A stretch of DNA of 64,000 nucleotides, from the NCBI RefSeq assembly GCF_031769215.1, contig NW_026782452.1:496001-560000 (forward strand), read 5' to 3'. Numbering within the stretch: the first letter of the stretch is position 1; each line of letters starts with the position of its first letter. The notes beneath the pieces are model-generated. The model saw nothing but the letters and a program-made list of their open reading frames with translations. It ran no database searches and was not told the origin of the DNA. The stretch comes from Ylistrum balloti. Its lineage: Eukaryota. Below are positions 7,148 through 64,000 of the stretch, piece by piece. Made by a program: the position numbers and the translations under genes.

Positions 7148-8178
7148 NNNNNNNNNNNNNNNNNNNNNNNNNNNNNNNNNNNNNNNNNNNNNNNNNNNNN
7201 NNNNNNNNNNNNNNNNNNNNNNNNNNNNNNNNNNNNNNNNNNNNNNNNNNNNNNNNNNNNNNNNNNNNNNNNNNNNNNNNNNNNNNNNNNNNNNNNNNNN
7301 NNNNNNNNNNNNNNNNNNNNNNNNNNNNNNNNNNNNNNNNNNACTAACAGGCAGAATGACTGACAGACAGACAGAGAAAGATAGAGGGAGAAAGATAGAG
7401 GGAGAGGGAGAGAGAGGGGGAAGGGAGAGAGAGAGACACACAGAGACACACAGAGAGGGAGAGACACAGAGAAAGAGGGAGAAATGGAGAGAGACAGACG
7501 TACAGACAGACGTACAAACAGACAGAGAGAGAGAGAGGGGGAGGGAGAGAAAGAAAGACAGACACAGCGAGACTCGGCTATAAATGCAACAAACGTAAAT
7601 ATCGTTGCATGTACAAGGGAATAAAACATATTATTTTACTTAGTTACTGAATATAAAAAGGGAAAAGTAATAATACCAGTTAAAAAAAACATCAAAAACT
7701 ACATACATAGAATAACTAGTCTTACTGGTGCTTAAATATATACAAATAATCTTCTCCAATTTTTCATTGTCAAATTTCTGCCTGGCATAGTCACCTTGGC
7801 AGTACATTTTTGAAAATGTAATATCCTTTTATTGAATTTATCACAGCATTCTTGTTGAAGATTTATGTAGAAATTTTGTTTTTATAAGACTTAATTGTGA
7901 TAAGAATTTCACTATCTACGCGATTACTTGCAAGATTCTTGATATTTACAAATATTTCAAATATAAAACTTTAATTTATTAATAAAGAGTGCGTCACGGA
8001 GTATCTCAATACTTTGCGTTTCTTGACATTTACACTGACTACCAATGGTTGTTTCCGGATCCATATTACACAATCTACTTTAAACAAGAATAAGTTTTTA
8101 GTTAAGAAATGTTTGCACTATCCTATATTGTAACCGTTGTAATTATATATATTTTGTTACTCTAAATGACTCTCTCTC

Positions 8179-8209
<31 letters not shown>

Positions 8210-8534
8210 GTCTCTCTGTCTCTCCTCTGTCTCTGTCGCACTATGTCTCTCTTTCTCTCTCTCTCCTACTCTCTCTCTCTCTGTCTCTCTATCAATGTCT
8301 CTCTGTCTCTCTATCTCTGTCTCTCTCTGTCTCTCTCTCTGTCTCTCTGGTATTTCTATCTTTTTTGTTTTATATGTGAGGATGCGTGTTGGCGTTTANN
8401 NNNNNNNNNNNNNNNNNNNNNNNNNNNNNNNNNNNNNNNNNNNNNNNNNNNNNNNNNNNNNNNNNNNNNNNNNNNNNNNNNNNNNNNNNNNNNNNNNNNN
8501 NNNNNNNNNNNNNNNNNNNNNNNNNNNNNNNNNN
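7148..8534. other. Two assembly gaps (7148-7342, 8399-8534) next to GA-rich (7343-7570) and CT-rich (8168-8345) microsatellites
   Basis: Runs of N. (GA)n/(GACA)n follows the first gap and (CT)n/(CTGT)n precedes the second. Confidence 0.97.
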
Positions 8535-33400: not shown

Positions 33401-33836
33401 CAGGAAAAAAACTTGTCAAGTTTCCAGGGGTTACAGTGATGCTGGCAAGACATGGCTAAGTACAATTCCTTGGTCCCTACATGCACACCAATCTAATGGA
33501 GGTCATTATTTATTTCAATGCCTCTGCTAGCAATCAAACCTGGAAACACTGGCTTACTAGTCCGACGCTCAACCAATTGAGCTAAAGAGAAGTTTAGAAG
33601 AATATTTCTGTCATGGATCTGAATTTCCACTTTTTTATTTAGTCTTTCCAGCTACAGCAGTTCCCATGTAATTTCTCCAGGAGGAGAAATGATCCATTAT
33701 TCTGGTGCAGAGACTATAAACAGATGACGGACAATACACCAAGACATAAGCTCTTCTGGTAATTGTTTCTAAAAACAAAAACAAAAAAGGCATTTTTGGG
33801 GTTTTCTCTTTTTTTTTTACTGTACATTTCAGAGAT

Positions 33837-44000: not shown

Positions 44001-46184
44001 TCCCTCCCCCACACTCCTCCTACCTAAAGACCCACCAAGAGGTAATATCCCTTCCCCTCCCTCCTCCTACCCAAAGACCCACCAAGAGGTAATATCCCTT
44101 CCCCTCCCTCCTCCTACCTAAAGACCCTAAAAGAGGTAATATCCCTCCCCCACACTCCTCCTACCTAAAGACCCACCAAGAGGTAATATCCCTTCCCCTC
44201 CCTCCTCCTACCTAAAGACCCACCAAGAGGTAATATCTCTCCCCCCACTTTAAGACCCACCAAGAGGTAATATCCCTCCCCCACACTCCTCCTACCTAAA
44301 GACCCACCAAGAGGTAATATCCCTTCCCCTCCCTCCTCCTACCCAAAGACCCACCAAGAGGTAATATCCCTTCCCCTCCCTCCTCCTACCTAAAGACCCA
44401 CCAAGAGGTAATATCCCTTCCCCTCCCTCCTTCTACCTAAAGACCCACCAAGAGGTAATATCTCTCCCCCACACTCCTCCTACCTAAAGACCCACCAAGA
44501 AGTAATATCCCTTCCCCTCCCTCCTCCTACCTAAAGACCCACCAAGAGGTAATATCTCTCCCCCCACTTTAAGTCCCACCTAGAGGTAATATCTCTCCCC
44601 CCACTTTAAGTCCCACCTAGAGGTAATATCTCTCCCCCCACTTTAAGTCCCACCTAGAGGTAATATGATAATATCTCTTTCCTACACACACACAAATTTA
44701 AAATTGTAACAATTTTGGTTTATTTTATGTAAATTTCTCACATTGTAACACAAATTGTTTGTTGACAGATTTCTCGCATTGTAACACATACCGTTTGTTT
44801 CTTATATCTCACATTGTATAAAAATTGTATGTGAGTAGCAACAGTTGGATCAATGGAACTGATAACATACATGTAAATATATAAAGGTTACTTTATAACA
44901 TGTATATATATTGCACTTATCGAGCTTGGAATAATTACGTCATAATACTATATTTTCTATCTATTTATAGAATAGGGTGTCTGCTTTTTGTTTACTTTAG
45001 GTGTAGAAGAATTGAGTTAGTTGCACTGAAGAAGTCAGGTGATAGGCAAAAGAAGTCAACAGTAACTGAATTGATTTAGAAATCTTTCCTGATGCTGTTG
45101 TGGTTTTGATACTATGTTTGATATCTCCAAAAATTGTATACTTTATGTTTTTCTTGCTTTGTGGTAGGAATTGGAGAAAAAGGTTGAATACTGGCTGACC
45201 AAGTATGACAAAGATGTAGAGGCCAAACAACATGAGCTGGATGTCCTCAAGGCCAGTAAGGCTAAGGATCTTGACCGCCTCCAGGAACTGACCAAACAGT
45301 ATAAGGAATATGAACAAGTAGTAGTTGAAGATCGTATTGAGAAGGAGAAAGCACGCCGAAAGGCAGACCAGGAGGCCATTGAGCTTAAGGCTGCCATCAG
45401 GGTAAGATTTAGTCAAATCTTATTGACAGCTCTCTCATCAAATGACCAACAAATAAATCACACCAGGTGGTGGTGGGGATGGGGGTGACTGGTCTTATTG
45501 CAAACCAATGAGGTAGATTCTGTCGGGAATTCTACAAAACAGTAACAGATATGGGTGGGCTTATTACCAGGCATGGGTGTATTGATGGATAAATATCGCC
45601 AGTATATATACTTATCATTTGACTATAACTAACACTGTACACAATATGTGAAAAATGAAAATTGTAGTGGTGCTTAGTTCTTAGCAGATTTGTTGGCAAC
45701 ATAAGTCTGCTTTAATTAAGAGTGCAGTAAATTTCATAAGGCGAGAACTATTTATCAATTTTATTTTTAATTGAAAGAAAGAACTTAGAAGAGACACAAA
45801 GAAAAAAAAAAAGTTATTGCCTTTTGTGAAGCCCACAAGCTTATGAATCTGTAGCTTTACAGAAAACCCAGCTCCGCTAGTAACAGGAGATGGAAGAATC
45901 TTTACTACTAAACAGAACATTTTTACATTAATCCTGTACATAAAAACAAAAGATTTCAATAATAATTTTATGTTATCAAAAAAAAACAACAAATGTAAAT
46001 AGACTTCTAATTTACTTGTTAAATGACTGCGATCATCAGATGGTCCGTTTTACAACTTGTGATTGTGTTACAGGTACAAGCCTGGTGGAGGGGTGTCATG
46101 GTCCGCAAAGGGTTCGGACCTTACAGTAAGAAGAAGAAGGGAAAGAAAGGCAAAAAAGGAAAGAAAGGCAAAAAGAAGAAGTAA
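41057..46184 (+). CDS. IQCG: IQ domain-containing protein G / dynein regulatory complex subunit 9, 7 coding exons, 386 aa
   Basis: Exons 41057-41179, 41590-41834, 42573-42701, 43400-43643, 43826-43900, 45168-45401, 46074-46184, with matching phases (1161 nt). Motifs match recalled human IQCG: ILEDCVDQLSVL, KDQLQEMKAKTNME, AQTQKRC, YWLTKYDKD, YEQVVVEDRIEKE, the IQ motif AIRVQAWWRGVMVRK, and a Lys/Gly-rich tail. Confidence 0.95.
41200..41490. repeat. Degenerate 45-bp tandem copies of the 3' end of IQCG coding exon 1
   Basis: About 6 units such as CCCACCACTTATGAGGGCAAATTTGATGCAGTAGAT, compared with the exon end CCCGCTGCTTATGAGGGCAAGTTTGATGCTGTAGAG|GTAAG. Confidence 0.8.
43878..44665. repeat. 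47/37-bp minisatellite made of the IQCG exon end plus its splice donor
   Basis: Unit CCTACCTTAAGACCCACCAAGAG|GTAATATCCCTCCCCCACACTCCT. The real donor is at 43901, followed by 17 copies ending at 44660. Confidence 0.97.
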
Positions 46185-49100
46185 AATGTGCGTTATCATT
46201 GTCAGCTGGACTGTCGCATTCTTCTTTAAGTGTGAATACAAACCTCTGTGATCTAGAAATGACTGAAAAATATATTTATCTGACCTTCAATAAAAATTAC
46301 TCGGACAATAAAATCATGTGATGACAGTTTTTATTCATTTTGGCTTTCAAAATACAACTTTGGATTTTTTCTACATTTCTATGTGGATAATTTGTTAGTA
46401 TATATATGTACCAATATATATTTATTATGTAAATATATCTCACTAGAACACAAATTATAAAGTAACCTTGTATTTGATGTCTTTGTTGATTAAATGTTCT
46501 GTTACAATTTACATATTGTTTGTTTGTTTACTGAAGTAAGCAAAATATTTCTGTTACCAATTTTGTCAAAACTGAATTTTGGTTGTACACTTTTAACATA
46601 GAAAAGGTTCTGAATGAAAACAGTATAGACACTAAATGTCGCATACAGAAATTTGATTTTAAATTTATAAAAAAAAAAGATATAAAAAATGAATACAAAA
46701 TATTTTGGAAGGCAGATGTATATCGGTGTAGTAACAAATATTTAAGAATTTTTAAATCGATCTTTTGATAAGACCAGCAGCCAACACATAACTTCCAATT
46801 ACTCAAAGTGGGCTTATTACAGGACAAGGAAATGGCATTGGTTTACAATTTTGGCAAACAGCAATATGTATGGGTGTGAAAGGGTTTATTGGAATCTGAC
46901 AGGAGCAGGATTTCTTGCAAGGTCATAGACAGGTCAAAGTACTTCAACAAAATTGATGTCCTCTTCTACAACTTTCACAAAAAATGTCCCATGGTGACAT
47001 ATCAAATTTAATTACAATACAGTTCTGACATTAGAAATTTAAGAAAAAAAAAAAAAAAAATTAAAAAAAAACTTTTCATTTTCAATTAGTAAGCTAAATA
47101 TAATCTCGAGTATACCCGTCAACTTATCATAATTATCATTCCTAACTGTAACATAGTATAACATATCTTTTTCTACGGCAGTTTTCTTAATGAACAACAT
47201 TTTGAAATCATGCAGAACTGTAGTTTGCAAGAAAATGTTTATTTATCCATTAAGGGGGAAAATTAATGAGGCTCATTGCTTTATTAAGGCCAACTACTGT
47301 AGGTACTGCAACAGAAGTGTAGACATTATCAGGAAAAAATAGTTTCGAATTTTCACAGTGTATGGAAAGTTGGTTGGACTGAATTGTTTTTTGTTTAAAG
47401 TAACAGTGATACTGGTGCTTTACCTTTAAATGTGAAAAGAAAAGCAAGTATTTTCATAAGAAAGCTTAATTTCATAGTTTGAGTCAGATGGACCCAAAAT
47501 GATTTTAAACGTAACATTTTGCGGAAACAAATTGTCTATTGATGGTTGGTTGACAGGTTTTACAACTGCTTCCACTGATGTTTTTATGGTGTTCAGACGA
47601 CAGGGGCCAATCTGTCCTTTATCCCCGTCTTTGGTGGCCCGTCGTGGGCCCATTCTTTAAACTCCATATATCTCTGTCACTCTCTACATCCTTGGAACAT
47701 GTCATGGCAAAATTGAAAGTTTCATGTGTGAAATTTTGTGGACTAGACGAAAAGATTAGTTTGATCCTTCAAACTTCGAGGTCACATACGATACGTTGTA
47801 ATGACTTTCATATAAGGTAGTGGTGTTAAATGATAATGGCACAACAGGTGTTTTACAACAGTTTGAAAGTGATGAGATATAAGTATGATCGATTTCAGCC
47901 ATTTCAGTAATTGTAAGCACTACTGGATCTCATTAGATCACCAATCAGTTTTACTGCCACAGAAGTGGAATAAATATTAGAAAGTAGAGTGTTTGAAACA
48001 GGATTCAATGTAACTGTAACTTTCTTGAACTTGCACTAGACTGTAATATGTTTTGCTCACAAAGTACAATGAAAGAATATTATTATCTCTAGTTAAATTC
48101 ATTTTATATGTGGTTCATTAAGTCTGTGTTACATGCATGACTGAATGTGTTATATTTGTGTTGAATAATTGTTATGCATTCTGTAAGTGAAACCTTTAGT
48201 CCTGTTGAATTGGGAATAAATAAATGAATAATTGTCAAACAGGTACAATATTGAACTTCACTTAAATTTTTCTATTAAATTGACACTTTTTCCGAATTGG
48301 GTACATGTTCAAAGGGGAGACAACTTGTGACAACTTGCGTCTTTTGTGTAATATCTATGCAATAAAATCGATTTAAATTCAAGGGAAGACAATTCAGGTA
48401 TACATCTTTAACGAAGTGAAACTGGCAATGTTTATTCCATTTGTCTTATAAATAAGTATTGCAATATTCTTAATATGTATTTTTATTTGTGGAAAATATC
48501 AATTTTATGAAAATGTTTGCATCAAAATAATTTAATCCTCTATGAAACAAATATTTCAAGTGACATTTTTTACGTTATTACCTAATGACTTAAAAATGAT
48601 GACGTCAGTTTAACAAAATAGCCGATATTCAGTGATTATCAAAAAGAGTCCATCATAAACGTAAAAATTATTGCAAAATGCGATTAAATTAAAGGGATTT
48701 AATGTAATTATTTTTTATTTTGTCGATTCATAACACCAAAAACGGAATGTATTCTCGGTTTATTTAAAGTACTTGTTTTGATGTTGTGCCAAATTACATA
48801 AAAAAAAAACTCATCTTGCCGTTAAAAAGAAAAGAAAAATTACTTTTCTACTATTGGTATTAAATTTGGCCGATGTTATTGCCAGCTTCTTAATTCAACC
48901 TGTGATAAGAACCTGCTTTTCAGTCCAACTTTTGTATATTGTCTTTATGTCCAATCATAAAAATGACATGTAGCATCATATGTCAGTCAACCTAGGTGAG
49001 GTCAATCATGCTTTTTCACTTTCAGTCTTGCACAAAGGTTTTTCATATCATTTCTTTAAAAGAATCTGGAGGAAATCTACTCACAGGGACCCGAGAATTT

Positions 49101-49572
49101 AGAATGAAATAGACTGTGACTACTGACTCGCTGCTCTCAGTCATGTCTTTAGTCAAGAGCAGGAAAGACATGTGGCTCTTTATTAGTTTACACCAATCAA
49201 ACATCAATTTTAGCGATGACACAAAACACATATCATACAGACAACAAAATATAGAGATGAGCGTTCTAAAGACAGAATGTATGGTCAGAGTTGTAATCCT
49301 CACAAATTATTGATGTTCAGATGGAAAGTGCAGATTTTCGCTTGAAATGTAGTCTGAAGTGGGTTCAAAGTCCCTAGTTCTGTTTATCAAAAATGGAACT
49401 GGGAACCAGATGATAGTTTTGTTGAACAAAAACTCATATGTTGGCAAAACGAAAAGTCCAACATGCATGATCTTATCTTCATCCAGCACAGGAATCGAAC
49501 CCACAACCTTTCAAACAAAAATTAAGACTACTACAGCCTAAGCAACATAAGAAATATTTGATGCAGATAGGA

Positions 49573-50880
49573 TCATGTCCATTGGACCTGTGGATTTGTA
49601 AACATATATTGTATTAAATACTTCATACAACTCCCCATCTCTTCACTTGTGGAAGAATTCAAGACAGGCAAGGCAAGACTCATCATGACCTTGAAGGACT
49701 CCAAAGATGATAAGGTGTGATTAGCCAGCATGGAAGTACGAACTGGCAGGAAATGGTCAGCATCAAGAGCAGTTGACGGGACTGGAAGTAGACTGATACA
49801 CAAAGACATTGATGGAACAATAGCAGTAGGAAGACAAGGTATAGGAACAACTAAGAGCACCTTTTGGAAAAAGGCTGATGCGGAAGAAAGGCATGGTCCT
49901 AAAGGAAATTAGAAATGGTGAGGAAGAACCAAGGCAGGCCAAAGCAGTTGCATTGGGAGCTCAAGGAGCGTGGACAATATGGGATACAGAACCGCATGCA
50001 CTTTCCTGGTCAGAAATCTGGAAGTACCCGCAATTCCAACTGCAATTCCTCCTCCGGTCTGTGTATGACGTGCTACCAACACCAGCAAATCTCCACTTGA
50101 TTGCCGCCTGTGTGGACAGAGAGGAACATTACAGCACATTCTTACCTCTTGTCAGGTGGCCTTAGCACAGGGAAGATATACATGGCGCCACAACCAAGTC
50201 TTAAGGGAGCAGGCAGATATTATGGAAAGGGAAAAAAAGAATAAGGCCACCCAACCAAGGTCCAGACATACACAGATTATGTTTGTGAAGGAAGGTGAGA
50301 CACCAACATCCGCATCACTGCAGAGAACTTCCAGAATTCTTTGTCAGGCAGGAGACTGGAAGCTGGCAGTAGAACTTAATCAGAGACTTACCTTTCCGGA
50401 CATTGTACCAACCAACCTTCGGCCGGATATGGTTCTTTGGTTGTCAACGACAAGAATGGTCATTATCATAGAACTAACAGTTCCATGGGTGGAAAGGTGC
50501 AGTGAAGCACTTGAACGGAAGAGAGGAAAGTACGAAGCATTGCTGATGGAGTGCAGGGAGAAAGGGTGGCAGACTTGCAGCTTTCCGGTCGAGGTGGGAT
50601 GCAGGGGCTTCCCGCACAGTCTGTGTGGAGAATGCTAGCTGAATTGGGAGTGTCAGGCAGGACCAAGAGATCAGCGGTGCAGAGGATGGCCAAGGAAACA
50701 GAGAGATCTTCATGCTGGGTGTGGATGAAGAAAGACTCAAGTAGCTGGACACCCTCCACCAACGCGCAGTGACTGATCATCACTGTGGACCCCCCCATCC
50801 TGAGAGTGTACTGAGCTAGGGGTCAAAACACACAGTCAGGGATGACCTCGACTGAGACGTCGGCGGTGAAGCAGTAGAAA
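49573..50880 (+). mobile_element. 5'-truncated, frameshifted non-LTR retrotransposon with a restriction-like endonuclease (HERO-type)
   Basis: Across frames: QLPISSLVEEFKTGKARL, EVRTGRKWSA, QGAWTIW, FLLRSVYDVLPTPANL, a CCHC knuckle (CRLCGQRGTLQHILTSC), RYTWRHNQVL, and the RLE motifs LRPDMV, IIELTVPW, RKRGKY and PVEVGCRGF. There are internal stops and frameshifts, and the RT core is absent. Confidence 0.85.
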
Positions 50881-51422
50881 CATCTTAGCTGTATTAAGGT
50901 AACTACATGGTTTGGGGGATCAGAGGTACCTTCTGCTAATAACACAATTAGTGTCATTACATATATTTACAGTTAGCCTGACTGGCTACCATCAACCCAG
51001 TGTTAATTTGGATTGTATTCACAGCAGAGTAGATACAGTGTGTACCAAGGGACAATAATGACGTCATTTTAGCGCCATTCTGACCAATGTTACGTCGATC
51101 TTTTCACATCGCCTCAGATAACACACAATAATATCTTCACGTTATTCATCTGATTACTATTTTCAAAGAGCTTTTCCAGCATGTAAACATACTGCGATCA
51201 ATATATGAAAAATGATACCCAGTTAAAATATTCTGACCCCTTAAAATTATTTCTCGTTAGCTATGCTTTGTCAAAAAATTGTCATCAAATACATGAATTA
51301 AATTCATATGTTCATATTATAAAAAATATTTAAAAAAAAAAAGATCTGTGAAACACTATCATTTTTTCTAAAAAAAAAACACGCACTCAGATCAGTTAAT
51401 TTCGCATACCTGAAATGATCGA

Positions 51423-51781
51423 CACGTGTATCGAACATGTGACTGACCAGCCGTTTCTGATGACGTCAACTTACAGTTACGCAGAAATACATGTATTACA
51501 TAAAATTATCATATGAATGGAAATGACATTGTGGTAACAGAAAAAAAATCAAAATGAAATAATGGTGGAAAATGGTTTATAATCGGTGTTGATGTGTGCA
51601 CGTTTTCTAAAGGGCAAGATTCAATTTTTTATTTTTGGTTGCCTTTTCTTAAATAAACCATATTTCTTGGCAAATGTCTTTCTTATAACATTTACTATTT
51701 AAATAAAATTAATTTTTCATTGATCAGTCCACAATTCGCTAGTTGATTAAAATCAGAAATGAGTCATCAAAAATGATCATG

Positions 51782-51816
<35 letters not shown>

Positions 51817-53089
51817 CACTTTTCCAACAAACACTGGCATCCAAAGAGGGATTGATTGGTTTTTTAATTGTATCTGGAGTATGTTTAACACGTAATTTGA
51901 ATGTGTATTAAGAAAAAAATACACCATTTTGCCAATGAAATATTAACACAATATTTAATGGTGAATTGTTTTAATCACTGTTTCTTATTCTTCTCGGAAG
52001 CGTCACATGTTACAGCAACTATCCTGGAGCAAGTCAACGCAGATCAATAGTAAAAATTAGCCGGTCCAAAATAAATAACGGTCCGAAACCTATGTCCAGA
52101 CTAAACTACAAATCAGTATGATGCATTCAATTCTGTAAAACATATTTTCTCCTCCAACGTAGTCTTAGAGGAAAACATCGTGAAATAATTAATTTATTCA
52201 TATATTCTAATGATTTTAGTCATAAAACCATTAAATAAATAAGCATATAAATAAATAGATAAATAGAAAAAATCATGATGATTCTTTTCAATTTCATAAA
52301 ATGAACCCTCTCTAATCTGGCCGGTATTCAATATCGGATTTAATTGTGTGCCGAAAAGTTCAAAGTCATACCGTGATGCTCTGTCCACGTGCCCAAGACA
52401 TATGCCTTAGCAAGGCAACGTATGCTGTCCACGTGCCCGGAAATCACGTTTCCTCACTGACCCAAATTCGCCGACAAATTATGCGCAAACACTATGCGCA
52501 GATGAAATGTTGTTTTAGACGACATGGCGGCTAAGCCTACAGAGCTTATATATGTCTAACATTGGAGTACACCTTACAGGGTTTGAGAGACGAGAGGACG
52601 TTTGAACATCAACAGACATTCAAGTAAGTTTCGTCTGTTCTTTCATTTCTAACATGCTTGTGGTGTTATTATTATAAGACGTTTCGTCCATTTATTTAGG
52701 GGTTTGTTAGTCACGAAGTTTTATTCAATGTATCGGTAGGATACTATTACGTAATAGTTATGAATAAAAACAAATTAAATTTAGTCTTTAGCTCATTATT
52801 GCAACAACTTTAGCATTATATCATTTAGGTCTAGATATCCGAGAGCAGCATTCATTGTGCACCTTTCGCCGTCAGTCGTCATTTAGACCGTCTCGCAATC
52901 ACTGCTCGAGAAATGCGACAAATAATGCGTTTTAAATCAAATTGATATTTCATTGACAAAGGTAATATATTGAATCGACACCAAATTCCCAATGGTCAAT
53001 GATAACGAGAGTAATTATAATAAAACTGACATGATCACTCATGGAATCCGGGAAGCCTGTAAACGTTTCACGTGTCGTCAGTTCACGTG
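51423..53089. promoter_or_regulatory. timeless promoter/enhancer with an E-box cluster and a non-coding exon 1 (about 52510-52623)
   Basis: CACGTG at 51423, 52386, 52430, 53069 and 53084. CACGTT at 51599 and 52445. CRE TGACGTCA at 51461. D-box-like TTACATAA at 51496 and TTACGTAA at 52747. Donor CAA|GTAAGT at 52624. Confidence 0.7.
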
Positions 53090-54049
53090 TGCAGTACATG
53101 TGTACCTGAACTTTTTATACATAACGTAGTGTTTAGATTCTATTGGGCATGTCTGAATCGATGCTGGCTCAGAAATCTGAAGCCTGGATGCAAAAATTAT
53201 TATAATACGAGCCTTTTGTACGTGTATGCAAAGTTGATTATGGATCTGTTACCACATATTAAAAATTACTTAAAAGAAAAAAAGCTTTTTAAAAGCAGGT
53301 TCTGTATATTTCACTGCATTATGTTGTGGCGCAACTGATGGAGTTGGTACACAGCATCAAGTGACATCAACTATGATAAATCAACATGATTTTAAAGCCA
53401 AAAATATGCTATTGTAATAGAGGTTATAATTTCTATCCCTGGACCTCTGCCTTACAAGTCTGACACTCAATAGATCGAGCTAAAGAGAAGTTCTCTCTAT
53501 CTGAGTGGTATGTTGGTGCTAGTTTTTACCAGGGTTACATATTGCACCTGCGGGAAATCACTCATCCTCAAGTTTCCAGGTTGTTCCTTGGCAACAGTCG
53601 AGGAAAATTTGTCATTTGCATGATTAGGAACACTAGATTCAGAAAAAAAGTATGATTTCATGCCACATATTGAGTGCTATGAAGACTTTCAAATAACTTT
53701 GTTTAAAAACATATAGAGTTAGTATAGTTCTACCATAGTGACACATATTATGTTGGAAAATCATGAGCTGATATGAGCTTTGCAGATATATACCCCTTGC
53801 CTTTCTTGATTTCCCAACTAACAAAACATTCAGGTCTTAAGTTCCGATAGTAGAGAAAGAAATTCTACTAACTGTTTCCTGTTTGCATTCATCAATATTT
53901 AAACTTTTTGGATAAATGTGGAAATTACCTTTTTTATTTATTAATACATAGACCTGTTTCACGAAGATTATACTTTTGTCTTGTCCTACTTATTTCTTCA
54001 CTAAGGTTGTGTGAAATGGTACTTTTTTTTTCTGTTGGGAATAACTAGT

Positions 54050-54225
54050 CAGGGTTTTCCATAATTTTGTTAGTAGTAGGCTGTGTAGTGAAAGTAGGAG
54101 ACTGGCCTGCCGTGTACGTGTAGTCGTGTTCGGAACATTATTACGGAACTAGATTGGTGTAGGCGGCCAAATGATCAAAGTAGCCGGTCAAATTGATCGG
54201 CTCCTGGCTCTTATTGAAAACCCTG
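54050..54225. mobile_element. 176-bp MITE, copy 1
   Basis: TIRs CAGGGTTTTCCATAA ... TTATTGAAAACCCTG. ACTAGT flanks both sides. Near-identical to 60707-60882. Confidence 0.85.
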
Positions 54226-54380
54226 ACTAGTGACATTGTTCGGTGCAAAGTGTCTGCACATTTGTTTCTCTGTCTTGTTCTTGGGTTGCAGTCGACTTCG
54301 CCTTATGGTAACATAAGTCGAGGTTGTAAATATTGGTAAACAGGAATTTTTCAGGATGTTATTAGTTAAACCCCTTACTA

Positions 54381-55660
54381 CCGATGAAGGGAAGGTGTGA
54401 ACGTTTCAAGTACTGTAGTACTGAACAAAGTATTGATAGTATTGTACTGAAGTACTTCACAAATCGAATTCCTTAAATTTATGCAACAAGCTCTCTGATT
54501 GGCAGAGCCAAGTCTAGATCGATTGTGGGTGGAGCCAGGTGAAAAAATACTGTGCAGACATCGGCATTTTACAAACACTTGACTGTCGCGAGAGGTTAAT
54601 TGGAAGAGTCCAAGTCACAGGTGGCTTCAGATCAGACCTAATTGGGTTGTCCCATTTTTTTCATTCTACACCCAATGATACCTTGCTTTTCCATCGATGG
54701 TACAACGAGAAAACGAAAGTTACTCAGTACTAAACTAATTTACGTACAAAATATATATCAACAGGTTAGATCACTGGGACCGGAGAATTCATAACATCTT
54801 AACAGTGAATATAGTCATATAGTCATTCTGTACTAGTTTTATTTATATATTTATTTTTTTGAAAGGGGGGGGGGGGGAGGGGAGGGGGGGAGGTTGGCTC
54901 AAAATATTTCGGTTTAAGCCCAAGCTCTATTATATGTAACAAAGAATTACGAATTACCTGGGACCTCCTGATATATGCCGATAATTCATACTGCATTAAA
55001 AAATAAAGGAATTCTGTGGTCCCATATATTTTTTATTTTATTTTTTATCTTTCCATCGAAAATTATACATATCCGCAACATGTGAAAAAACTTTGAAGTT
55101 GGTTGGGCGGAATATCTAGAGCATTTACTACTGCAAGTTCCAGAAATTCTGACACAAGTCGGGTATTTGCCCGAAGCCTCTGTCTCATGACATTGAATAC
55201 ATATTCAGTTACGTTGTATTCCGGGGAATAAGGTGGCTGAAAAACCAGGGACACGCCATATTCTTTCAGCATATTTCTTAAAATGCGCTCTCCCTGTCTA
55301 TGGTGATGGAATCCACAATTATCCATCACAACCACATCGCCTTGTACAAAAACAGGATTCCCCATATCGTTCGTATCGGACATAATTTCGTCGAAGAAAA
55401 TTTTGCATACTGTTGCCGTCATCGGACATTTTTCCAGCGATTACTTAGTAATTGTTATGTAACTGATAGTGTACAATAACTCCGCCTACCGGAACAAATT
55501 GGGTGTCAGATCAACTATTCAGGTTGTCTAAACTCCGCCCCCGACCAATCACAGAGGTTGTTGTATACTTGACTCGATTATTTGAATACTTCAATACAAT
55601 AGTATCAATACTTTGTTCAATACTATAGTAAGTGTGTCGTTCACACCTTCCCTTCATCGG
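54381..55660 (-). mobile_element. Internally deleted IS630/Tc1/mariner-superfamily DNA transposon with long TIRs and a DDE_3 C-terminal fragment (D38E)
   Basis: About 140-bp imperfect TIRs beginning CCGATGAAGGGAAGGTGTGAACG, with TA on both flanks (ends uncertain by about 3 bp). The minus ORF 55422-55063 contains VVVMDNCGFHH...FQPPYSPEYNVTE, with 38 residues between D and E. The HTH and first catalytic D are missing. Confidence 0.88.
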
Positions 55661-55809
55661 TAATAAACTATATTATAGCTTTCTTTGTATCAGTGACTAA
55701 TTTTTCATTCATAAATTTTCTTTATTTGTTTGAAATTTCAATTGCAGATCTGTGGCAGATAGCAAATTTGCTTTACTTATTCTCCTGAAGAAAAAATAAT
55801 CCTCTAAAT

Positions 55810-58800
55810 ATGGAGTGGCATATTATGAACGTAGATGGGATAAACAGCCTGTCCAGTAACCTCGGAATGGTGGAGGACGGGGTGTATATTCCCTCCAGTA
55901 ACAGCCAAGGTAATTATAGTAATCACTAAGTATGTATTGTATCTAAGATCTCCTTCCTCCTAATGTTATTCCTAGTATTGTTCCAGTATACATAGATATA
56001 TAACAAAGGTAGAGACATTCTATGATATTAAAGAGAAGTATTAAACTATGTTTTCAAATTTGAATGGCAGTGATTTTTGGGACTCTGATATATAAGTCCT
56101 GGATTCATGCTTTTCATGTGTATATAGCTTTGAAAACACCTTGTATCAGTTAGTCCAACTGGCCATGAATTCCGCATTCAAACACGGGAAAAGAAATAGA
56201 TTTTTATTGCTGAGAATTATTGTTTGAAAATAATCTTATCGAATGTGAAATACAATTTAAATTGAGATAAATTTTCATTTGGCATTAAGTTTGTTATATT
56301 AGCCTACCATCATTAGAGGATAGTGGGCTGACCAAATTGCCCTCTGTCAGTGGTTAGTATCTGGCATCTTGCATCAGTCTGTCCTAAACAGTTCTTGTTG
56401 TCACTATTTTTTGAGAAGTACCAGATCCACAAATTTCATATATAGGTTCCTCTTGTTCCCTATATGTTAACATTGATTGTTGGACTTATCTGAAAAATAA
56501 TTTTTAAGATAAAAGTGACCATCTTTGATTCTGACAGTAATTTGTTTTTATTAGAGGCGGGGTGGTTGGAGGGGGAGGATACTGGAATCAGATTGTTTGT
56601 TTGTCCTTCTGTTCGTAGATGCAAGATGTACCGGCTACTCCTCCTAAATTACTGAATTGATTTCAATGATCCTATACTTTGCATATGTGCGTAAATTATA
56701 TGTTGAGCTACCTTCCCTTTTTCGAAAAGTTATGCCCCAGGTAGACACAGCTCGTCAAAAGGTTTTGTTTGGTGTTTGTTAAACATGAGTCACTCACAGC
56801 CACTGCAGCTTTTTATCAGAGCTATGAATTTGTCTCTATGTTTGGTGTTTGTTAAACATGAGTCACTCACAGCCACTGCGGCTGTTAATTTGTTGGAGCG
56901 TTTTATCAGAGCTATGAATTTGTCTCTATGTTTGGTGTTTGTTAAACATGAGTCACTCACAGCCACTGCAGCTGTTAATTTGTTGGAGCTTTTTATCAGA
57001 GCTATGAATTTGTCTCTATGTTTGGTGTTTGTTAAACATGAGTCACTCACAGCCACTGCAGCTGTTAATTTATGAATTTGTCTCTATGTTTGGTGTTTGT
57101 TAAACATGAGTCACTCACAGCCACTGCAGCTGTTAATTTGTTGGAGCTTTTTATCAGAGCTATGAATTTGTCTCTATGTTTGGTGTTTGTTAAACATGAG
57201 TCACTCACAGCCACTGCGTCTGTTAATTTATGAATTTGTCTCTATGTTTGGTGTTTGTTAAACATGAGTCACTCACAGCCACTGCAGCTTTTTATCAGAG
57301 CTATGAATTTGTCTCTATGTTTGGTGTTTGTTAAACATGAGTCACTCACAGCCACTGCGTCTGTTAATTTATGAATTTGTCTCTATGTTTGGTGTTTGTT
57401 AAACATGAGTCACTCACAGCCACTGCGTCTGTTAATTTATGAATTTGTCTCTATGTTTGGTGTTTGTTAAACATGAGTCACTCACAGCCACTGCAGCTGT
57501 TAATTTGTTGGAGCTTTTTATCAGAGCTATGAATTTGTCTCTATGTTTGGTGTTTGTTAAACATGAGTCACTCACAGCCACTGCAGCTGTTAATTTATGA
57601 ATTTGTCTCTATGTTTGGTGTTTGTTAAACACTGCAGCTTTTTATCAGAGCTATGAATTTGTCTCTATGTTTGGTGTTTGTAAACACTCACAGCCACTGC
57701 AGCTGTTAATTTGCTTTTTATCAGAGCTATGAAGCTTTTTATCAGAGCTATGAATTTGTCTCTATGTTTGGTGTTTGTTAAACATGAGTCACTCACAGCC
57801 ACTGCGTCTGTTAATTTATGAATTTGTCTCTATGTTTGGTGTTTGTTAAACATGAGTCACTCACAGCCACTGCAGCTGTTAATTTGTTGGAGCTTTTTAT
57901 CAGAGCTATGAATTTGTCTCTATGTTTGGTGTTTGTTAAACATGAGTCACTCACAGCCACTGCGTCTGTTAATTTATGAATTTGTCTCTATGTTTGGTGT
58001 TTGTTAAACATGAGTCACTCACAGCCACTGCAGCTGTTAATTTGTTGGAGCTTTTTATCAGAGCTATGAATTTGTCTCTATGTTTGGTGTTTGTTAAACA
58101 TGAGTCACTCACAGCCACTGCGTCTGTTAATTTATGAATTTGTCTCTATGTTTGGTGTTTGTTAAACATGAGTCACTCACAGCCACTCACAGCCATTTGC
58201 TATGTTTGGTGCTGTTAATTTGTTCACAGCCACTGAGCTGTTAATTTATGAATTTGTCTCTATGTTTGGTGTTTGTTAAACATGAGTCACTCACAGCCAC
58301 TGCAGCTGTTAATTTGTTGGAGCTTTTTATCAGAGCTATGAATTTGTCTCTATGTTTGGTGTTTGTTAAACATGAGTCACTCACAGCCACTGCAGCTTTT
58401 TATCAGAGCTATGAATTTGTCTCTATGTTTGGTGTTTGTTAAACATGAGTCACTCACAGCCACTGCGGCTGTTAATTTGTTGGAGCTTTTTATCAGAGCT
58501 ATGAATTTGTCTCTATGTTTGGTGTTTGTTAAACATGAGTCACTCACAGCCACTGCGGCTGTTAATTTGTTGGAGCTTTTTATCAGAGCTATGAATTTGT
58601 CTCTATGTTTGGTGTTTGTTTGTTCACAGCCAACTGTTAATTTATGAATTTGTCTCTATGTTTGGTGTTTGTTAAACATGAGTCACTCACAGCCACTGCA
58701 GCTGTTAATTTGTTGGAGCTTTTTATCAGAGCTATGAATTTGTCTCTATGTTTGGTGTTTGTTAAACATGAGTCACTCACAGCCACTGCAGCTGTTAATT

Positions 58801-61800
58801 TGTTGGAGCTTTTTATCAGAGCTATGAATTTGTCTCTATGTTTGGTGTTTGTTAAACATGAGTCACTCACAGCCACTGCAGCTGTTAATTTGTTGGAGCT
58901 TTTTATCAGAGCTATGAATTTGTCTCTATGTTTGGGGTTTGTTAAACATGAGTCAATGACAGCCACTGCAGCTTTTTATCAGAGCTATGAATTTGTCTCT
59001 CATTCAGCTAGGATGGAAAGATGTCATATGTTATGTAACATATCTATTGTACATGCTTGAAAAACTAGACTGAAAGTTCTTGGATGTTTGAATTAAATGT
59101 TTGTGCCATAACCCAATGAAGCAAAATGATGTAAAATAATATGCAATTATCGCTCGCACTAGAGCCAAACATGGACAAGTGAACTGATCAGGTGATAAAA
59201 TTCCAGATCTCTTACCTAAGTCTGTGTCCCTCACTGTGACCGCATCTTTTTGTAATGATCATTGTGGAAGGTCAAATGTCTTCAAAATGTCCCAAATGAG
59301 CTTATCTATAGGAATGGCAGGATTCATTTCTGTCCCAATTTTATGTGAAGCATCATTTGTTTGGCTGACCATTAAAGGACACAGGGATGGGGCCAAACAG
59401 GGAAATGGAGTGTTGTGTGCTTTGAAATTCAGGATTCCATTTCCTGTAGTTTGTATGAAGCAGTTTTAGCTTGCACTTGTTGTAACATTATATTAAGAGA
59501 ATATTGTGTTGTTTATTTCTCACATATTGATTTTTACTTTTTTTTTTTTTTTGATGGAGACCAATCTTGACAATTTGATGATCCAAACTACAATATCTTG
59601 TCACTCGGTCATAATTTGTACATTTCAAAATTGAGCTCATTTTTATTTGTAGTAATAAACTGTATTTTGATTTTGGTACTACTGCATTGTTAAGTTGCCT
59701 GAGACCTAGGAGGCCATTGGCTTCTTGTTGTTATTATAAACTGATGGATTAAAGGGTCAAGAATGGCTGAAGCCATATTAAGCCCTTTGGCCAAAAGTGA
59801 AAATGGAAAAAATTTAAATAGTTAAATGTCCCGTAAAATAACAGAAAAAGAAAGAAAACTTTCAAATATTTAAATAAATCCAAACTAAATGACATGAAGA
59901 AAAGAAATAAAAGTAAATATACCAGATTTTTCAGGTCTAATGGATCAGTTAGTTCGCTTTTGAGTGTACATATATTTGGACCCTGATGTAAATTTAGTTG
60001 GACCCTTCATGCCTGTGGTCAGGTATCTGCATGTGATCATTTTTTTACTGCAGCAATCCTTGAAGAAAATTTGGAGTTCCTTATGAGAGATAACATGGAC
60101 AAGACCTACAGAAGACTGCTGTTTAATAACAAATTCCCAGAAAAGGTATGTATTTATCATTTCTGTACATATCATTCCTCAAAATTCTGTAAGTGTATAT
60201 TGTAAATGATATTGAATAGAATTAGGTAGTTAAGATTAATTTTTCAATGGTTCATACTTCGCCAAAAGCTTAGGATGTATTTTATAAGGAAGTCATGTAA
60301 TATTTTCAAAGTATATAAGTTTTTCATGATTATATTTAGACCTCAAATTTGAAAGTGCGACGAAAACAAAACCTCTTGAAGAAGGTATCTGTGGTATGCA
60401 ATGCTATATACACTAAGAGAGTGATGTTACAGACATTATATTTACATAATTAATTTCTCAACCAATACCTTTTGTTATCTTTGTATATATTACAAATATT
60501 CATGTGTAATGTGTATACATACAAAATGTATAAGAAATTTGTCAGTCGGATTTACCTGTGCACATTTCAACTGCAGGAACTGGTCCCATTGATCAAGTAC
60601 ATCAGAGATGACCACACAAACCTACAGGAAGCATTGAGGTCAGTCTTCACTACCTTGTTTATCTGCAACTTTCCAACCAATAAGCCCCCTTTATTTTTCA
60701 GAATCACAGGGTTTTCCATAATTTTGTTAGTAGTAGGCTGTGTAGTGAAAGTAGGAGGCTGGCCTGCCGTGTACGTGTAGTCGTGTACGGAACATTATTA
60801 CGGAACTGGATTGGTGTAGGCGGCCAAATGATCAAAGTAGCCGGTCAAATTGACCGGGGACCGGCTCTTATGGAAAACCCTGGATCATTCAAAATAATTG
60901 AAATAGTAAGCTAAGGTAATCCACAAATAAGAATGAATTTTTACATGAGGGGAGGGAGCCTAACAAAAAAGGTTCCATGTTATATACTGTATAAGAATTT
61001 CATACTATTTCAGAGTAAACCCATGGGGTTGATCAAAATTATTGTTTTTACAGATTTATCATTTGAGCTTGGAATATTAGATTAAGGAAATGTTAATGTT
61101 TCAATACTTATGGCAGTGTATCTGAACTACAGATGTAATTGATCAATGTGGGTTTTTATGGAATACCTAAGGTCTTGTGCATATTGCGGTCGTCCTGCAG
61201 TTTAATACTCTTTTCTGATTGGTCAATAAATGCTCCATTTCTTGGTAGTGTATTAAACTAAAATGAATAAGTTGCGACCACTTTTCAATCTGATTAAATA
61301 TTGTAACTTGTAAAATAATTTGGTGCAATTCAAATTCTCATACAGATCTTCTCTAGGCACCTTGAGCCTGAAATTAATGTTCTGTTTAGATCAATATCCA
61401 AATGGTCCATCATGAAAATCTTGTGTTTGATCCTGATTAGATATTCAAATGTTTTCTGATCGTGCTGAAAAATGCTATCGATAACAAGGACAGATCTGAA
61501 AAATATTGAAGCCCTTGTTTGATACAGGAATTTTCTGAATGTGCTGAATGATGAAGCAAATCCACTGCAATGACATCCACAGAAGGATTGGCTTTACTTG
61601 GCAATATCAATATTTACAGGGATAAAAAGAGGAAACTTACAACAAATTGCATCCATATTCCTGATCTCTTTTGAACGTACTTTCAGATTATGGAATATAC
61701 AATTAAATGTAACCAATGTTGTAGATTGATGATCCTGTTGACAAATCCTGTGGAGTATGACTATGACACAAATGAAAGGACCAAACCACCATGGGCTATT

Positions 61801-63592
61801 GAGCTTGAGAGTGCAATCAAAGATACTGTTGAAAAATGCTTCTGTAAAACATTTGTGACAGCTATCGTAGAGGAAATGAAACTTCTTCTAGAAGAGGTAT
61901 TTATGATTATGATTCAACACATTACATTTATTGTATATTGTAGTTATATGTCTTCATCATTATATTGGGGGCAGTATATGACATACCCCTATTCATATCT
62001 CTCCTGTCACGTCACGTTCTATCCCATTCTGTTCTGTTCCATCATATCTTGAGAACTTCTCAACAGATTTAGTTCAGATTTACTCCATAGCATTGTAACA
62101 TCATGTTCTATACCTTATAAAGATGATCATATTTCTTCATGGTGAAGGGGTCAAAGGTCACATTGGATATTTTCTGCAGATTTATCAAACAATGATACTT
62201 GCATACTTCAGAGTGAGGGCATTTCATCCATACAGACATTTTCTGTTTTATCATTTCTAACCTGTGAATTTGTGACTGATTTTATTGTGTATATTGTATG
62301 ATGACTAACAGTGTTTACCTAGGACAAGATTTCAACTAAACCTGTCAAACAAACAAACAAATTTATGGCATTCCAGGGCTCTCACACCCCATTTTGGGAC
62401 TGGGGCCCTTAGAATCGGGGAAAAATAATGGTGTTTTCCTTAGAATTGGGAAAACTTCATGTCTAGATTGGGGAAAAAGAATATCAACCCCAAATCTGGC
62501 AGATGGAGAGCCCTACATTATGGATTGTCTGTTGTCCATCAGCCTTTTCCTTTGAAATCTTTAGCTTTCTGAAATATGCAACATTTTGATCCCACTGGTT
62601 GTATGATACTATTCTGTAAGCCACCTCCTACCATCAAGAGACCTAGAGTCAAGATATTGGCTAGAAGCATTCCAATTCTTATCAAGAAGCAAATGGCACA
62701 ACAATTCTAATGATTGAAACCTAGCATAATGAGATGAATGACTGTAAAATTTTGAACCATTTTCTTTGATGTTCTCAATAGGAAGGTATATAAAGGTCTT
62801 AATAACTGATGAAGAATTTCTTCTGACTATCCAGAAGGCCAAGGGCCATTTTATCAGGATATTAGCATAAAGTTGGATGAATGACCGTCCAATTTTTTTT
62901 TTGAATGAATGATCATGACTCATTCAAATCAATATTTTTGAGCAATTTTTTCTAGTAATCGAGAGACCAAGATTCCTGATGTTTGGCCATTTGATAGCAT
63001 GCTGAAGTGAAGGACTTTCAAATTCAATGTTCAAATCAATTACTTAGTTTAGTTGTTATCGTCTCAGAAATCAGACCTGTCAAAATCTTTGATTTCATCT
63101 GAACAAGAAATTGACTATCAGATTATTTGACTGTGTTACTGGAATAAAATCACTTGGGTTTGTAATACACACAAATAACCCTAGTCATTTTAAACTCACA
63201 TGAACAGCATTCTGTTTTGTTAAAGATCCTATTTTATTGAATTTCTAATTCTCATTATGAATTTTGTTAATATAGATCTGTAACAGTCGAGCAAAACATG
63301 TTGCTAGAATATTTAATGTACACATGTAGATGATTTTCTTTACGGCATTATGAATTAAACTGCTCAATACAGTGCCATGTTAGTTGTGATTTTTAACTTA
63401 CATTTCATTCCGACTTATCTGTTGGGAGATTTCTTCATCTTTATTTATCATTTTACAGTCTGGACCATACAGCCTAACGGACGACGGAGTCGCGGCAATC
63501 AACAAATGTCTTTTCATGATTCGTAATCTTCTATACATCAAGGAGTCCAGTCCTGACCAGTCCACCATAATGCAGCACGTTGAGCGAGTGAA
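55810..63592 (+). CDS. tim: Timeless, Drosophila/TIM1-type circadian clock protein; first 5 coding exons, gene continues beyond the window
   Basis: Exons 55810-55909, 60054-60145, 60577-60638, 61725-61896, 63459-63592, all GT-AG with matching phases. Spliced protein: MEWHIMNVDGINSLSSNLGMVEDGVYIPSSNSQAILEENLEFLMRDNMDKTYRRLLFNNKFPEKELVPLIKYIRDDHTNLQEALRLMILLTNPVEYDY...TAIVEEMKLLLEESGPYSLTDDGVAAINKCLFMIRNLLYIKE. This is colinear with recalled Drosophila TIM (MDW...SSLGCLEGDTYV...AILEE...RTFRR...DLIPLL...IRILVNLTVPVE...VVEYMKHILE...INNCLLLLRNILHIPE). Confidence 0.88.
56765..58997. repeat. Modular 90/73/68-bp satellite in timeless intron 2
   Basis: Core ATGAATTTGTCTCTATGTTTGGTGTTTGTTAAACATGAGTCACTCACAGCCACTGC with variable tails. 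About 27 monomers. It yields the 30-aa periodic ORFs. Confidence 0.97.
60707..60882. mobile_element. 176-bp MITE, copy 2
   Basis: TIRs CAGGGTTTTCCATAA ... TTATGGAAAACCCTG. Same length and orientation as copy 1, with a handful of substitutions. Confidence 0.85.
62374..62515. mobile_element. About 140-bp MITE-like element with CAGGGCTCTC termini
   Basis: Left end CAGGGCTCTC. The right end GAGAGCCCTA is a 9/10 inverted match. Confidence 0.5.
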
Positions 63593-63708
63593 GTACGTAA
63601 AATTTGTCTGATGTCCTTTATATAACAAGTAACAAAATATTCAGGGTTATAAGAAATAAAGTAGAAATTATGAAAACTTATATACTAATGTACCTGAATT
63701 CACCAGAG

Positions 63709-64000
63709 CGACTTTAGGATAGGTGTGACTTTAGGATAGGTGTGAATTAAGGATAGGTGTGACTTTAGGATAGGTGTGACTTCAGGATAGGTGTGACTTT
63801 AGAGTAAGTGCAAACTTAGAATAGGTGTGACTTCATGATAAGTGTGACTTTAGGATAGGTGTGACTTTAGAATAGGTGTGACTTCATGATAAGTGTGACT
63901 TTAGGATAGGTGTGACTTCGGGATAGGTGTGACTTCATGATAAGTGTGACTTTAGGATAGGTGTGACTTCATGATAAGTGTGACTTTAGGATAAGTGTGA
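63709..64000. repeat. 17-bp minisatellite (GTGACTTTAGGATAGGT)n running off the window
   Basis: About 17 tandem copies visible, in the timeless intron after exon 63459-63592. Confidence 0.95.

What the first reader, a model, noticed from the sequence alone, without database searches (positions are those of the whole stretch)
55810..63592. Hidden, divergent Drosophila-type timeless (TIM1) gene
Seen: five short exons that splice in phase into a TIMELESS N-terminal domain. Diagnostic matches favour TIM1 (M-E/D-W start, AILEE, T(Y/F)RR, LTxPVE, INxCLxxxRNxL) over TIMEOUT/vertebrate TIMELESS (CLESVKDLIRYL, LTQP). Established: TIM1 is the CRY-degraded light-input partner of PER in flies, is absent from vertebrates, and has been reported in some lophotrochozoans. 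Inference: an insect-like light-resetting arm in this animal's clock. The sequence looks fast-evolving, so it may be a diverged paralogue, possibly relevant to tidal or lunar timing.
Basis: partly seen in the sequence, partly recalled or inferred. Interest (0 to 1): 0.75.

Follow-up and report, generated by a model that had tools for sequence, protein, structure and literature searches.

The report
Scallop Drosophila-type timeless gene, 5′ end
The five exons are real and form the start of the Drosophila-type timeless clock gene of the scallop Ylistrum balloti, but the gene is already annotated in RefSeq and its kind is already known in bivalves, so the finding is correct but ordinary.

Summary
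Exons at 55810-55909, 60054-60145, 60577-60638, 61725-61896 and 63459-63592 (+ strand, all GT-AG, phases fit) encode residues 1-187 of a public 910-aa protein, RefSeq XP_060078749.1 "protein timeless-like [Ylistrum balloti]". The window is 100% identical to that assembly. The gene runs about 21 kb past the window end and is intact.

The TIM1 reading is supported, mainly by the whole protein. It scores 257 bits against Drosophila TIM and 70 bits against human TIMELESS. It groups with tick timeless against a TIMEOUT-type protein and a plant homologue (support 100/99). An AU test rejects grouping it with TIMEOUT (p=0.0002). The 187 window-encoded residues alone only lean that way (55 vs 30 bits; tree unresolved).

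"Hidden" is wrong, because the gene is annotated. "Diverged paralogue" is unsupported: one orthologue each turned up in Mizuhopecten and Pecten (64-67% identity), with the same intron positions and strong purifying selection. "Divergent" holds for the N-terminal domain.

Light-dependent capture by CRY is untested. Met-Glu-Trp is kept, but His-Ile replaces the pocket-inserting Leu4-Leu5, and the protein ends 55 residues after the TIMELESS_C match, so it has no long insect-type C-terminal tail. No RNA run exists for this species. Low interest.

The parts
55810..55909 (+). Coding exon 1 (start codon at 55810; residues 1-33 plus the first base of Ala34); donor GTAATT
   Evidence: 100% identical to P0001 residues 1-33. 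An in-frame stop lies 8 codons upstream. The first ten residues are invariant in four scallop sequences.
60054..60145 (+). Coding exon 2 (residues 34-64, holds AILEE and TYRR); acceptor AG, donor GTATGT
   Evidence: The same exon limits (residues 34-64) occur in Pecten maximus and Mizuhopecten.
60577..60638 (+). Coding exon 3 (residues 65-84 plus two bases of Arg85); donor GTCAGT
   Evidence: identical to P0001 residues 65-84.
61725..61896 (+). Coding exon 4 (last base of Arg85, residues 86-142; holds LLTNPVE); donor GTATTT
   Evidence: Another individual (run X1) carries one synonymous change here plus V133I and M136V.
63459..63592 (+). Coding exon 5 (residues 143-186 plus two bases of Lys187; holds AINKCLFMIRNLL); donor GTACGT at 63593
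   Evidence: (100% over P0001 residues 143-187). It is the only exon with a Pfam TIMELESS hit of its own.
55910..60053 (+). Intron 1 (4144 nt), swollen by a 2.2 kb tandem array at 56807-58973
   Evidence: units of 68/90/158 nt. The same intron is about 2.0 kb in Pecten maximus and 0.8 kb in Mizuhopecten.

Best explanation
This is the 5' end (five coding exons, residues 1-187, most of the first armadillo domain ARM1) of the single Drosophila-type timeless (dTIM/TIM1) gene of the scallop Ylistrum balloti. The gene is already annotated as XP_060078749.1, 910 aa, with about 22 coding exons over 29 kb, of which 21 kb lie beyond the window. Shown here: the protein has the dTIM core, namely ARM1, a short disordered acidic linker, ARM2 and the TIMELESS_C/PAB domain. 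It is intact, conserved among scallops and under purifying selection. Inferred from the family: it acts in the clock's negative limb as a partner of PER and/or CRY, as proposed for the oyster. It may be captured by light-activated CRY1 through its free Met-Glu-Trp N-terminus. I give identity as a dTIM orthologue about 0.9 and an insect-like, CRY-dependent light response only about 0.4.
For: Identity with the RefSeq model and assembly. Pfam on P0001: TIMELESS 41.7 bits and TIMELESS_C 39.4 bits, both above cut-off; residues 1-187 alone give 42.7 bits. Labelled anchors in PDB: Drosophila TIM 8dd7_B 257 bits (E=2.7e-75) vs human TIMELESS 7pfo_K 70 bits. Controls behave as expected: tick timeless 413 vs 135 bits, and the TIMEOUT-type protein P0006 104 vs 838 bits. 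Tree of full proteins: scallops plus ticks against P0006 plus a plant homologue, support 100/99; AU rejects scallops+TIMEOUT, p=0.0002. Foldseek puts 8dd7_B first, E=1.6e-18; the model folds well over ARM1 and ARM2 and is disordered at 222-320. Orthologues at 64-67% identity in Mizuhopecten and Pecten, plus a transcript contig at 61%, with the same intron positions. On the five exons pN=0.154 vs pS=0.83. The residues aligned with Drosophila T90 and P92, which matter for importin binding, are kept as T91 and P93. Oyster CgTIM is 934 aa and clusters with insect TIM (PMC5224872).
Against: No RNA run of this species was on offer, so the junctions rest on the RefSeq model, on a relative's transcript and on conservation. 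The tree holds only two dTIM lineages (scallops, ticks) and two outgroup proteins, because the word searches reached no oyster, cephalopod, annelid or insect dTIM. The window-encoded part alone leaves the tree unresolved (AU p=0.2). Against an insect-like light arm: positions 4-5 are His-Ile, whereas Leu4-Leu5 insert into the CRY pocket in the fly complex. The protein ends 55 residues after the position aligned to fly residue 1120, so it has no stretch that could match the fly's C-terminal CRY contact near 1209-1219. The inter-ARM stretch is about 138 aa against about 404 in the fly, so PER-binding site 1 is largely missing. PMC12049834 reports the same for Mollusca in general.
Confidence: 0.9

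Rival explanations
1. It is a true dTIM orthologue that no longer works as the light-captured target of CRY1. Its derived N-terminal domain and changed pocket residues would mean it serves only as a light-independent co-repressor, or has another role.
For: His4-Ile5 replace Leu4-Leu5. The stem branch of the N-terminal domain is long, 2.32 vs 1.24 in ticks. Pfam and human-TIMELESS scores for this domain are low: 31-42 vs 91 bits, and 28.9 vs 82.6 bits. There is no long C-terminal tail. PMC12049834 doubts that molluscan dTIM even binds PER.
Against: Met1, an acidic residue 2 and Trp3 are kept and invariant in four scallops. The N-terminus is free: MEW follows the first ATG, with an upstream stop. 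The first 187 residues are the better conserved part within scallops. [quoted passage not shown] Non-insect dTIMs in general have short tails.
Confidence: 0.3
2. It is a diverged extra paralogue of dTIM, beside a more canonical tim1 gene elsewhere in the scallop genome.
For: The word-based searches could have missed a canonical copy that shares no 5-residue words with this protein. The N-terminal domain is unusually derived.
Against: Exactly one hit per scallop species. Length (910-921 aa) is close to oyster CgTIM at 934 aa. Intron positions are conserved. PMC12049834 maps dTIM duplications only to chelicerate and crustacean lineages. The earlier notes on this genome hold no other timeless note.
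Confidence: 0.05
3. It is the TIMEOUT/TIM2 (replisome-type TIMELESS) gene of the scallop.
For: The start M-E-W-H-I-M-N also resembles human M-D-L-H-M-M-N. The N-terminal exons alone do not reject it (AU p=0.2).
Against: 257 vs 70 bits for fly TIM against human TIMELESS. The N-terminal profile gives 55 vs 30 bits. The full-length tree gives 100/99 and AU p=0.0002. A genuine TIMEOUT-type protein scores 838 bits on human TIMELESS and 225 bits on Pfam TIMELESS, against 70 and 42 here.
Confidence: 0.02
4. It is a decaying pseudogene or a chance exon model.
For: Exon-by-exon searches are nearly blank. There is no RNA run for the species.
Against: All 910 residues map on the locus in order. Splice sites are canonical. 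pN 0.154 vs pS 0.83. A relative expresses the orthologue as one open frame.
Confidence: 0.01

Closest known systems
RefSeq XP_060078749.1, 'protein timeless-like' of Ylistrum balloti (assembly GCA_031769215.1, contig JAUZWB010001153.1)
   Same: It is the same gene. Residues 1-187 equal the five exons, and window 45810-64000 is 100% identical to the contig.
   Different: Nothing differs.
Scallop orthologues: 'protein timeless-like' of Mizuhopecten yessoensis (921 aa) and Pecten maximus (914 aa)
   Same: 67% and 64% identity over the full length, the same Pfam domains, the same intron positions in the first exons and an invariant MEWHIMNVDG start.
   Different: Intron 1 is 0.8-2.0 kb there and 4.1 kb here, because of a tandem array.
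Drosophila melanogaster TIMELESS (PDB 8dd7 chain B, CRY-TIM complex)
   Same: Collinear ARM1 (residues 8-174 vs 7-175, 47.5 bits) and ARM2 plus PAB (313-855 vs 580-1120, 212 bits). Met1, an acidic residue 2, Trp3, AILEE, T-F/Y-RR, LT.PVE and TMMHH are shared.
   Different: Overall identity is only about 23% (Foldseek). His4-Ile5 stand in place of Leu4-Leu5. The inter-ARM region is about 138 vs about 404 residues. The tail after PAB is 55 residues, so it has no stretch that could match the fly's C-terminal CRY contact or the long insect tail.
Crassostrea gigas CgTIM (PMC5224872) and molluscan dTIMs in PMC12049834
   Same: The same kind of gene in the same class of animals: about 900-930 aa, a short central region and a short tail. 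The oyster protein is placed with insect and crustacean TIM.
   Different: No oyster sequence could be fetched here, so orthology with it is inferred, not tested. PMC12049834 reports low substitution rates for molluscan dTIM, whereas the scallop N-terminal domain looks derived.
TIMEOUT / TIM2 / vertebrate TIMELESS (PDB 7pfo chain K, 5mqi)
   Same: The same superfamily and fold (TIMELESS N domain, TOF1-like helical region, TIMELESS_C); Foldseek ranks 2-5.
   Different: Much weaker similarity (70 bits), and it lies on the other side of the 100/99 split.

Membership tests
Drosophila-type TIMELESS (dTIM / TIM1) | TIMELESS N-terminal domain (ARM1) together with the TIMELESS_C / PAB domain | tested here: met
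   PF04821 at 41.7 bits (cut-off 25) and PF05029 at 39.4 bits (cut-off 23.8) on P0001. Residues 1-187 alone give 42.7 bits.
Drosophila-type TIMELESS (dTIM / TIM1) | Closer to fly TIM than to vertebrate TIMELESS | tested here: met
   257 vs 70 bits for the whole protein. The profile of the window-encoded part gives 55 vs 30 bits. Controls behave reciprocally.
Drosophila-type TIMELESS (dTIM / TIM1) | Groups with dTIMs and not with TIMEOUT in a tree | tested here: met
   The full-length tree gives 100/99 and AU p=0.0002 against scallops+TIMEOUT. Sampling is thin: ticks are the only other dTIMs, with one TIMEOUT-type protein and one plant protein. With the N-terminal part alone the tree is unresolved.
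Drosophila-type TIMELESS (dTIM / TIM1) | Free N-terminal motif that enters the CRY flavin pocket (fly Met1, Asp2, Trp3, Leu4, Leu5) | tested here: inconclusive
   Met-Glu-Trp is kept and invariant in scallops, but positions 4-5 are His-Ile. MEW follows the first ATG, with an upstream stop.
Drosophila-type TIMELESS (dTIM / TIM1) | ARM2 with PER-binding site 2 and the CTT-like motif | tested here: met
   Residues 313-855 align with fly 580-1120 at 212 bits. DEAYLFWELAL aligns with fly DTSHFFWLVT (motif named in PMC12049834).
Drosophila-type TIMELESS (dTIM / TIM1) | PER-binding site 1 with its NLS between the ARM domains, and the insect C-terminal CRY-interaction tail | tested here: not met
   The linker is about 138 vs about 404 residues, and the tail is 55 residues. 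PMC12049834 reports the same for Mollusca and other non-insects, so this marks insect dTIMs, not the family as a whole.
Drosophila-type TIMELESS (dTIM / TIM1) | Binds PER, is degraded in light through CRY and JETLAG, and cycles in expression | not testable with these tools
   No RNA runs for the species and no biochemistry.
TIMEOUT / TIM2 / vertebrate-type TIMELESS | High similarity to human TIMELESS across the N domain and the helical core | tested here: not met
   70 bits here against 838 bits for a genuine TIMEOUT-type protein. Pfam TIMELESS gives 42 vs 225 bits.

The most novel reading that the evidence does not exclude
Scallop dTIM has a strongly derived ARM1 domain and carries His-Ile where fly TIM puts Leu4-Leu5 into the CRY pocket. 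This could mean that light-dependent capture by CRY1 was retuned or lost in Pectinidae. Scallops, which have many eyes and opsins, would then reset their clock by another route and keep dTIM only as a light-independent repressor partner.
Probability: 0.15. Interest if true: 0.45.

Novelty: already known. Interest (0 to 1): 0.12.

Why it matters
It matters little beyond good annotation. The result shows that a reader without tools can recover a five-exon model exactly. It also fixes the type (Drosophila-type, not TIMEOUT) of a RefSeq gene whose name leaves that open. That is useful because the bivalve clock literature uses 'timeless' and 'timeout' loosely: a 2026 Mytilus preprint names Timeout where the oyster model it follows has timeless. 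The only mildly interesting residue is the derived N-terminal domain and the changed pocket residues of scallop dTIM. These make a simple, testable question about CRY1-dependent light resetting in scallops.

Tried and rejected
Exon-by-exon Pfam and PDB searches were almost blank, so single exons are too short to classify.

The exhaustive HMMER search with exon 5 found only the gene's own protein plus P0002, an 844-aa repeat protein that is a chance hit.

Three word searches (the whole protein, residues 440-600, and a scallop plus tick alignment) reached only scallops, ticks, one TIMEOUT-type transcript and one plant protein. They reached no oyster, mussel, cephalopod, annelid or insect dTIM. 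This limits the tree and is no evidence of absence.

The RNA search found only one DNA-like run, kept as contigs. Laying it showed about 10x genomic contigs of another individual, with no spliced joints at the exon borders.

The supplement of PMC12049834 is not held, and the Chlamys islandica clock paper is not held.

No upstream conservation was found with Pecten or Mizuhopecten, or with the relative's 5' UTR. The upstream IQCG-like exon was not found within 10 kb of the other scallops' genes, so synteny is undecided.

Rfam finds nothing at 55000-64000.

The stored public protein P0001:1-187, which is identical, was used instead.

The N runs at 7148-7342 and 8399-8534 were left alone.
Full report
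**1. What is in the sequence**

Reading 55000-64000 and translating the proposed exons gives five exons on the + strand:
- E1 55810-55909
- E2 60054-60145
- E3 60577-60638
- E4 61725-61896
- E5 63459-63592

All introns are GT-AG. The exon lengths (100, 92, 62, 172, 134 nt) keep one frame. The split codons read Ala34 and Arg85, and Lys187 is split with the next exon. An in-frame stop lies 8 codons before the ATG.

**2. Exon by exon the signal is weak**

Only E5 touches Pfam TIMELESS (E=0.019, 14.7 bits, profile positions 133-157, below the cut-off of 25). E2, E4 and E5, the three tried against PDB, hit no TIM protein there. The joined protein was not typed or assembled for any search.

**3. The gene is public**

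The exhaustive HMMER search with E5 returned a 910-aa protein, P0001, matching at 100% over its residues 143-187. That is exactly where E5 should lie if the four earlier exons are right. P0001 begins with the translations of E1-E4. The script confirms identity for every whole-codon part.

P0001 is RefSeq XP_060078749.1, "protein timeless-like [Ylistrum balloti]", a scallop protein. Its locus L001 (GCA_031769215.1, contig JAUZWB010001153.1) is 100% identical to window 45810-64000. All 910 residues map in order on about 22 coding exons, ending 21 kb past the window end. So the gene is not hidden and its downstream exons are not disrupted.

**4. Which kind of timeless**

Pfam finds TIMELESS (41.7 bits) and TIMELESS_C (39.4 bits) on P0001. 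Scores against solved, named structures are:

| Query | Drosophila TIM (8dd7_B) | Human TIMELESS (7pfo_K) |
|---|---|---|
| P0001 (this gene) | 257 bits (E=2.7e-75) | 70 bits |
| Tick "timeless" P0009 (control) | 413 bits | 135 bits |
| P0006, 1423-aa transcript-derived protein (control) | 104 bits | 838 bits |

The controls behave reciprocally, so P0006 is TIMEOUT-type.

A maximum-likelihood tree of full proteins holds four scallops, five tick entries, P0006 and a plant homologue. It separates scallops plus ticks from P0006 plus the plant with support 100/99. An AU test rejects a scallop+TIMEOUT clade (p=0.0002). An AlphaFold model (mean pLDDT 64; ARM1 and ARM2 mostly 75-90; linker 222-320 and the tail disordered) has 8dd7_B as its first Foldseek match (E=1.6e-18), followed by the replisome TIMELESS chains.

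There is a caveat. For the 187 window-encoded residues alone, a scallop profile still prefers fly TIM (55 vs 30 bits). A tree on that part is unresolved, though, and AU does not reject TIMEOUT (p=0.2). The TIM1 call therefore rests mainly on the part of the gene outside the window. The tree's sampling is also thin, because the word searches reached no other molluscan or insect dTIM.

**5. Orthologue, not stray paralogue**

The word search finds one relative each in Mizuhopecten yessoensis (921 aa, 67%) and Pecten maximus (914 aa, 64%). It also finds a 959-aa product of a 3.4-kb contig from run SRR19746223 (61%). That contig carries the frame uninterrupted, so it is a transcript. Its 40 extra N-terminal residues come from a non-ATG start call; the first ATG gives MEWHIMN, with a stop further upstream.

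Residues 1-33 and 34-64 are separate exons in both other genomes. The exon holding residues 143-187 (144-189 in Mizuhopecten numbering) is too. The alignment of the four N-termini has no gap at any junction. On the five exons, nonsynonymous differences from the relative's transcript are 0.154 per site, against saturated synonymous differences of 0.83.

Oyster CgTIM is 934 aa and clusters with insect TIM (PMC5224872). PMC12049834 reports dTIM in Mollusca and maps duplications only to chelicerates and crustaceans. No second timeless note exists for this genome in the scan's records.

**6. How divergent it is**

The N-terminal domain is derived:
- Pfam TIMELESS gives 31-42 bits for three scallop proteins and nothing at E≤0.01 for the fourth, against 91 for ticks and 225 for TIMEOUT.
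- Against the human N-terminal domain (5mqi) the scallop scores 28.9 bits and the tick 82.6.
- The scallop stem branch for this domain is 2.32 changes per site against 1.24 for ticks. Over the whole protein it is 1.38 vs 1.16.

Within scallops, however, the first 187 residues are better kept (73-76% identity) than the whole protein (61-67%). The change therefore lies on the stem of the family and is not ongoing decay.

**7. How it probably works**

By homology it is a clock repressor partner. The fly CRY-TIM structure shows Met1 and Asp2 at the interface centre, and Leu4-Leu5 deep in the flavin pocket (bioRxiv 10.1101/2022.07.27.501640). Scallops keep Met-Glu-Trp but have His-Ile at positions 4-5. 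The residues aligned with fly T90 and P92, which matter for importin binding, are kept as T91 and P93.

The scallop protein ends 55 residues after the position aligned with fly residue 1120, so it has no stretch that could match the fly's C-terminal CRY contact near 1209-1219. Its inter-ARM stretch is about 138 residues against about 404 in the fly. This fits what PMC12049834 describes for molluscs, and those authors question PER binding there. Light-dependent capture by CRY1 is thus possible but unshown. I put it near 0.4.

**8. RNA support**

No RNA run of this species was served. Run X1 is about 10x genomic DNA of another individual. It has four exon differences: two synonymous, plus V133I and M136V.

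**9. Verdict**

But the gene is already annotated, and its kind is published for bivalves. The "hidden" and "paralogue" claims fail, and the tidal or lunar link is speculation. Interest is low.

Noticed in passing
window 56807-58973: A 2.2 kb tandem array (units of 68, 90 and 158 nt built from the same blocks) fills half of intron 1 of the timeless gene. It is why this intron is 4.1 kb here, against 0.8-2.0 kb in two other scallops.
   Followed up: partly
window 63710-64000: A 17-nt tandem repeat (consensus GACTTTAGGATAGGTGT, 17 copies) starts 118 nt into intron 5 and runs to the window end.
   Followed up: no
window 55063-55422 (- strand): A 119-aa ORF matches the DDE_3 transposase domain (49 bits, profile 67-138 of 146). 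It is a transposase fragment lying 390 nt upstream of the timeless start codon.
   Followed up: partly
window about 60700-60890 and about 62370-62520: Two short intronic elements with terminal inverted repeats (such as CAGGGTTTTCCATAA ... TTATGGAAAACCCTG) draw summed contig depths of 15,000-35,000 in run X1, against about 10 around them. They look like very high-copy MITE-like repeats.
   Followed up: partly
L003 1-160 (contig of SRR19746223): The 40 extra N-terminal residues of P0005 come from an ORF caller that used a non-ATG start. The first ATG gives MEWHIMN, as in the other scallops.
   Followed up: yes
P0007, P0009 (tick timeless models): The tick dTIM models start MKRR... and lack the Met-Asp/Glu-Trp start. 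Either the models miss a first exon or ticks differ at the CRY-facing end.
   Followed up: no
window 50156-50638 (+), called gene at L001 4413-4829: An ORF of 138-160 aa is called as a gene in the public record but has no Pfam match. It may be a repeat-derived fragment.
   Followed up: partly
window 61867 and 61876: Another individual (run X1) carries V133I and M136V in exon 4, beside two synonymous exon changes. These are ordinary polymorphism in the less conserved part of ARM1.
   Followed up: yes
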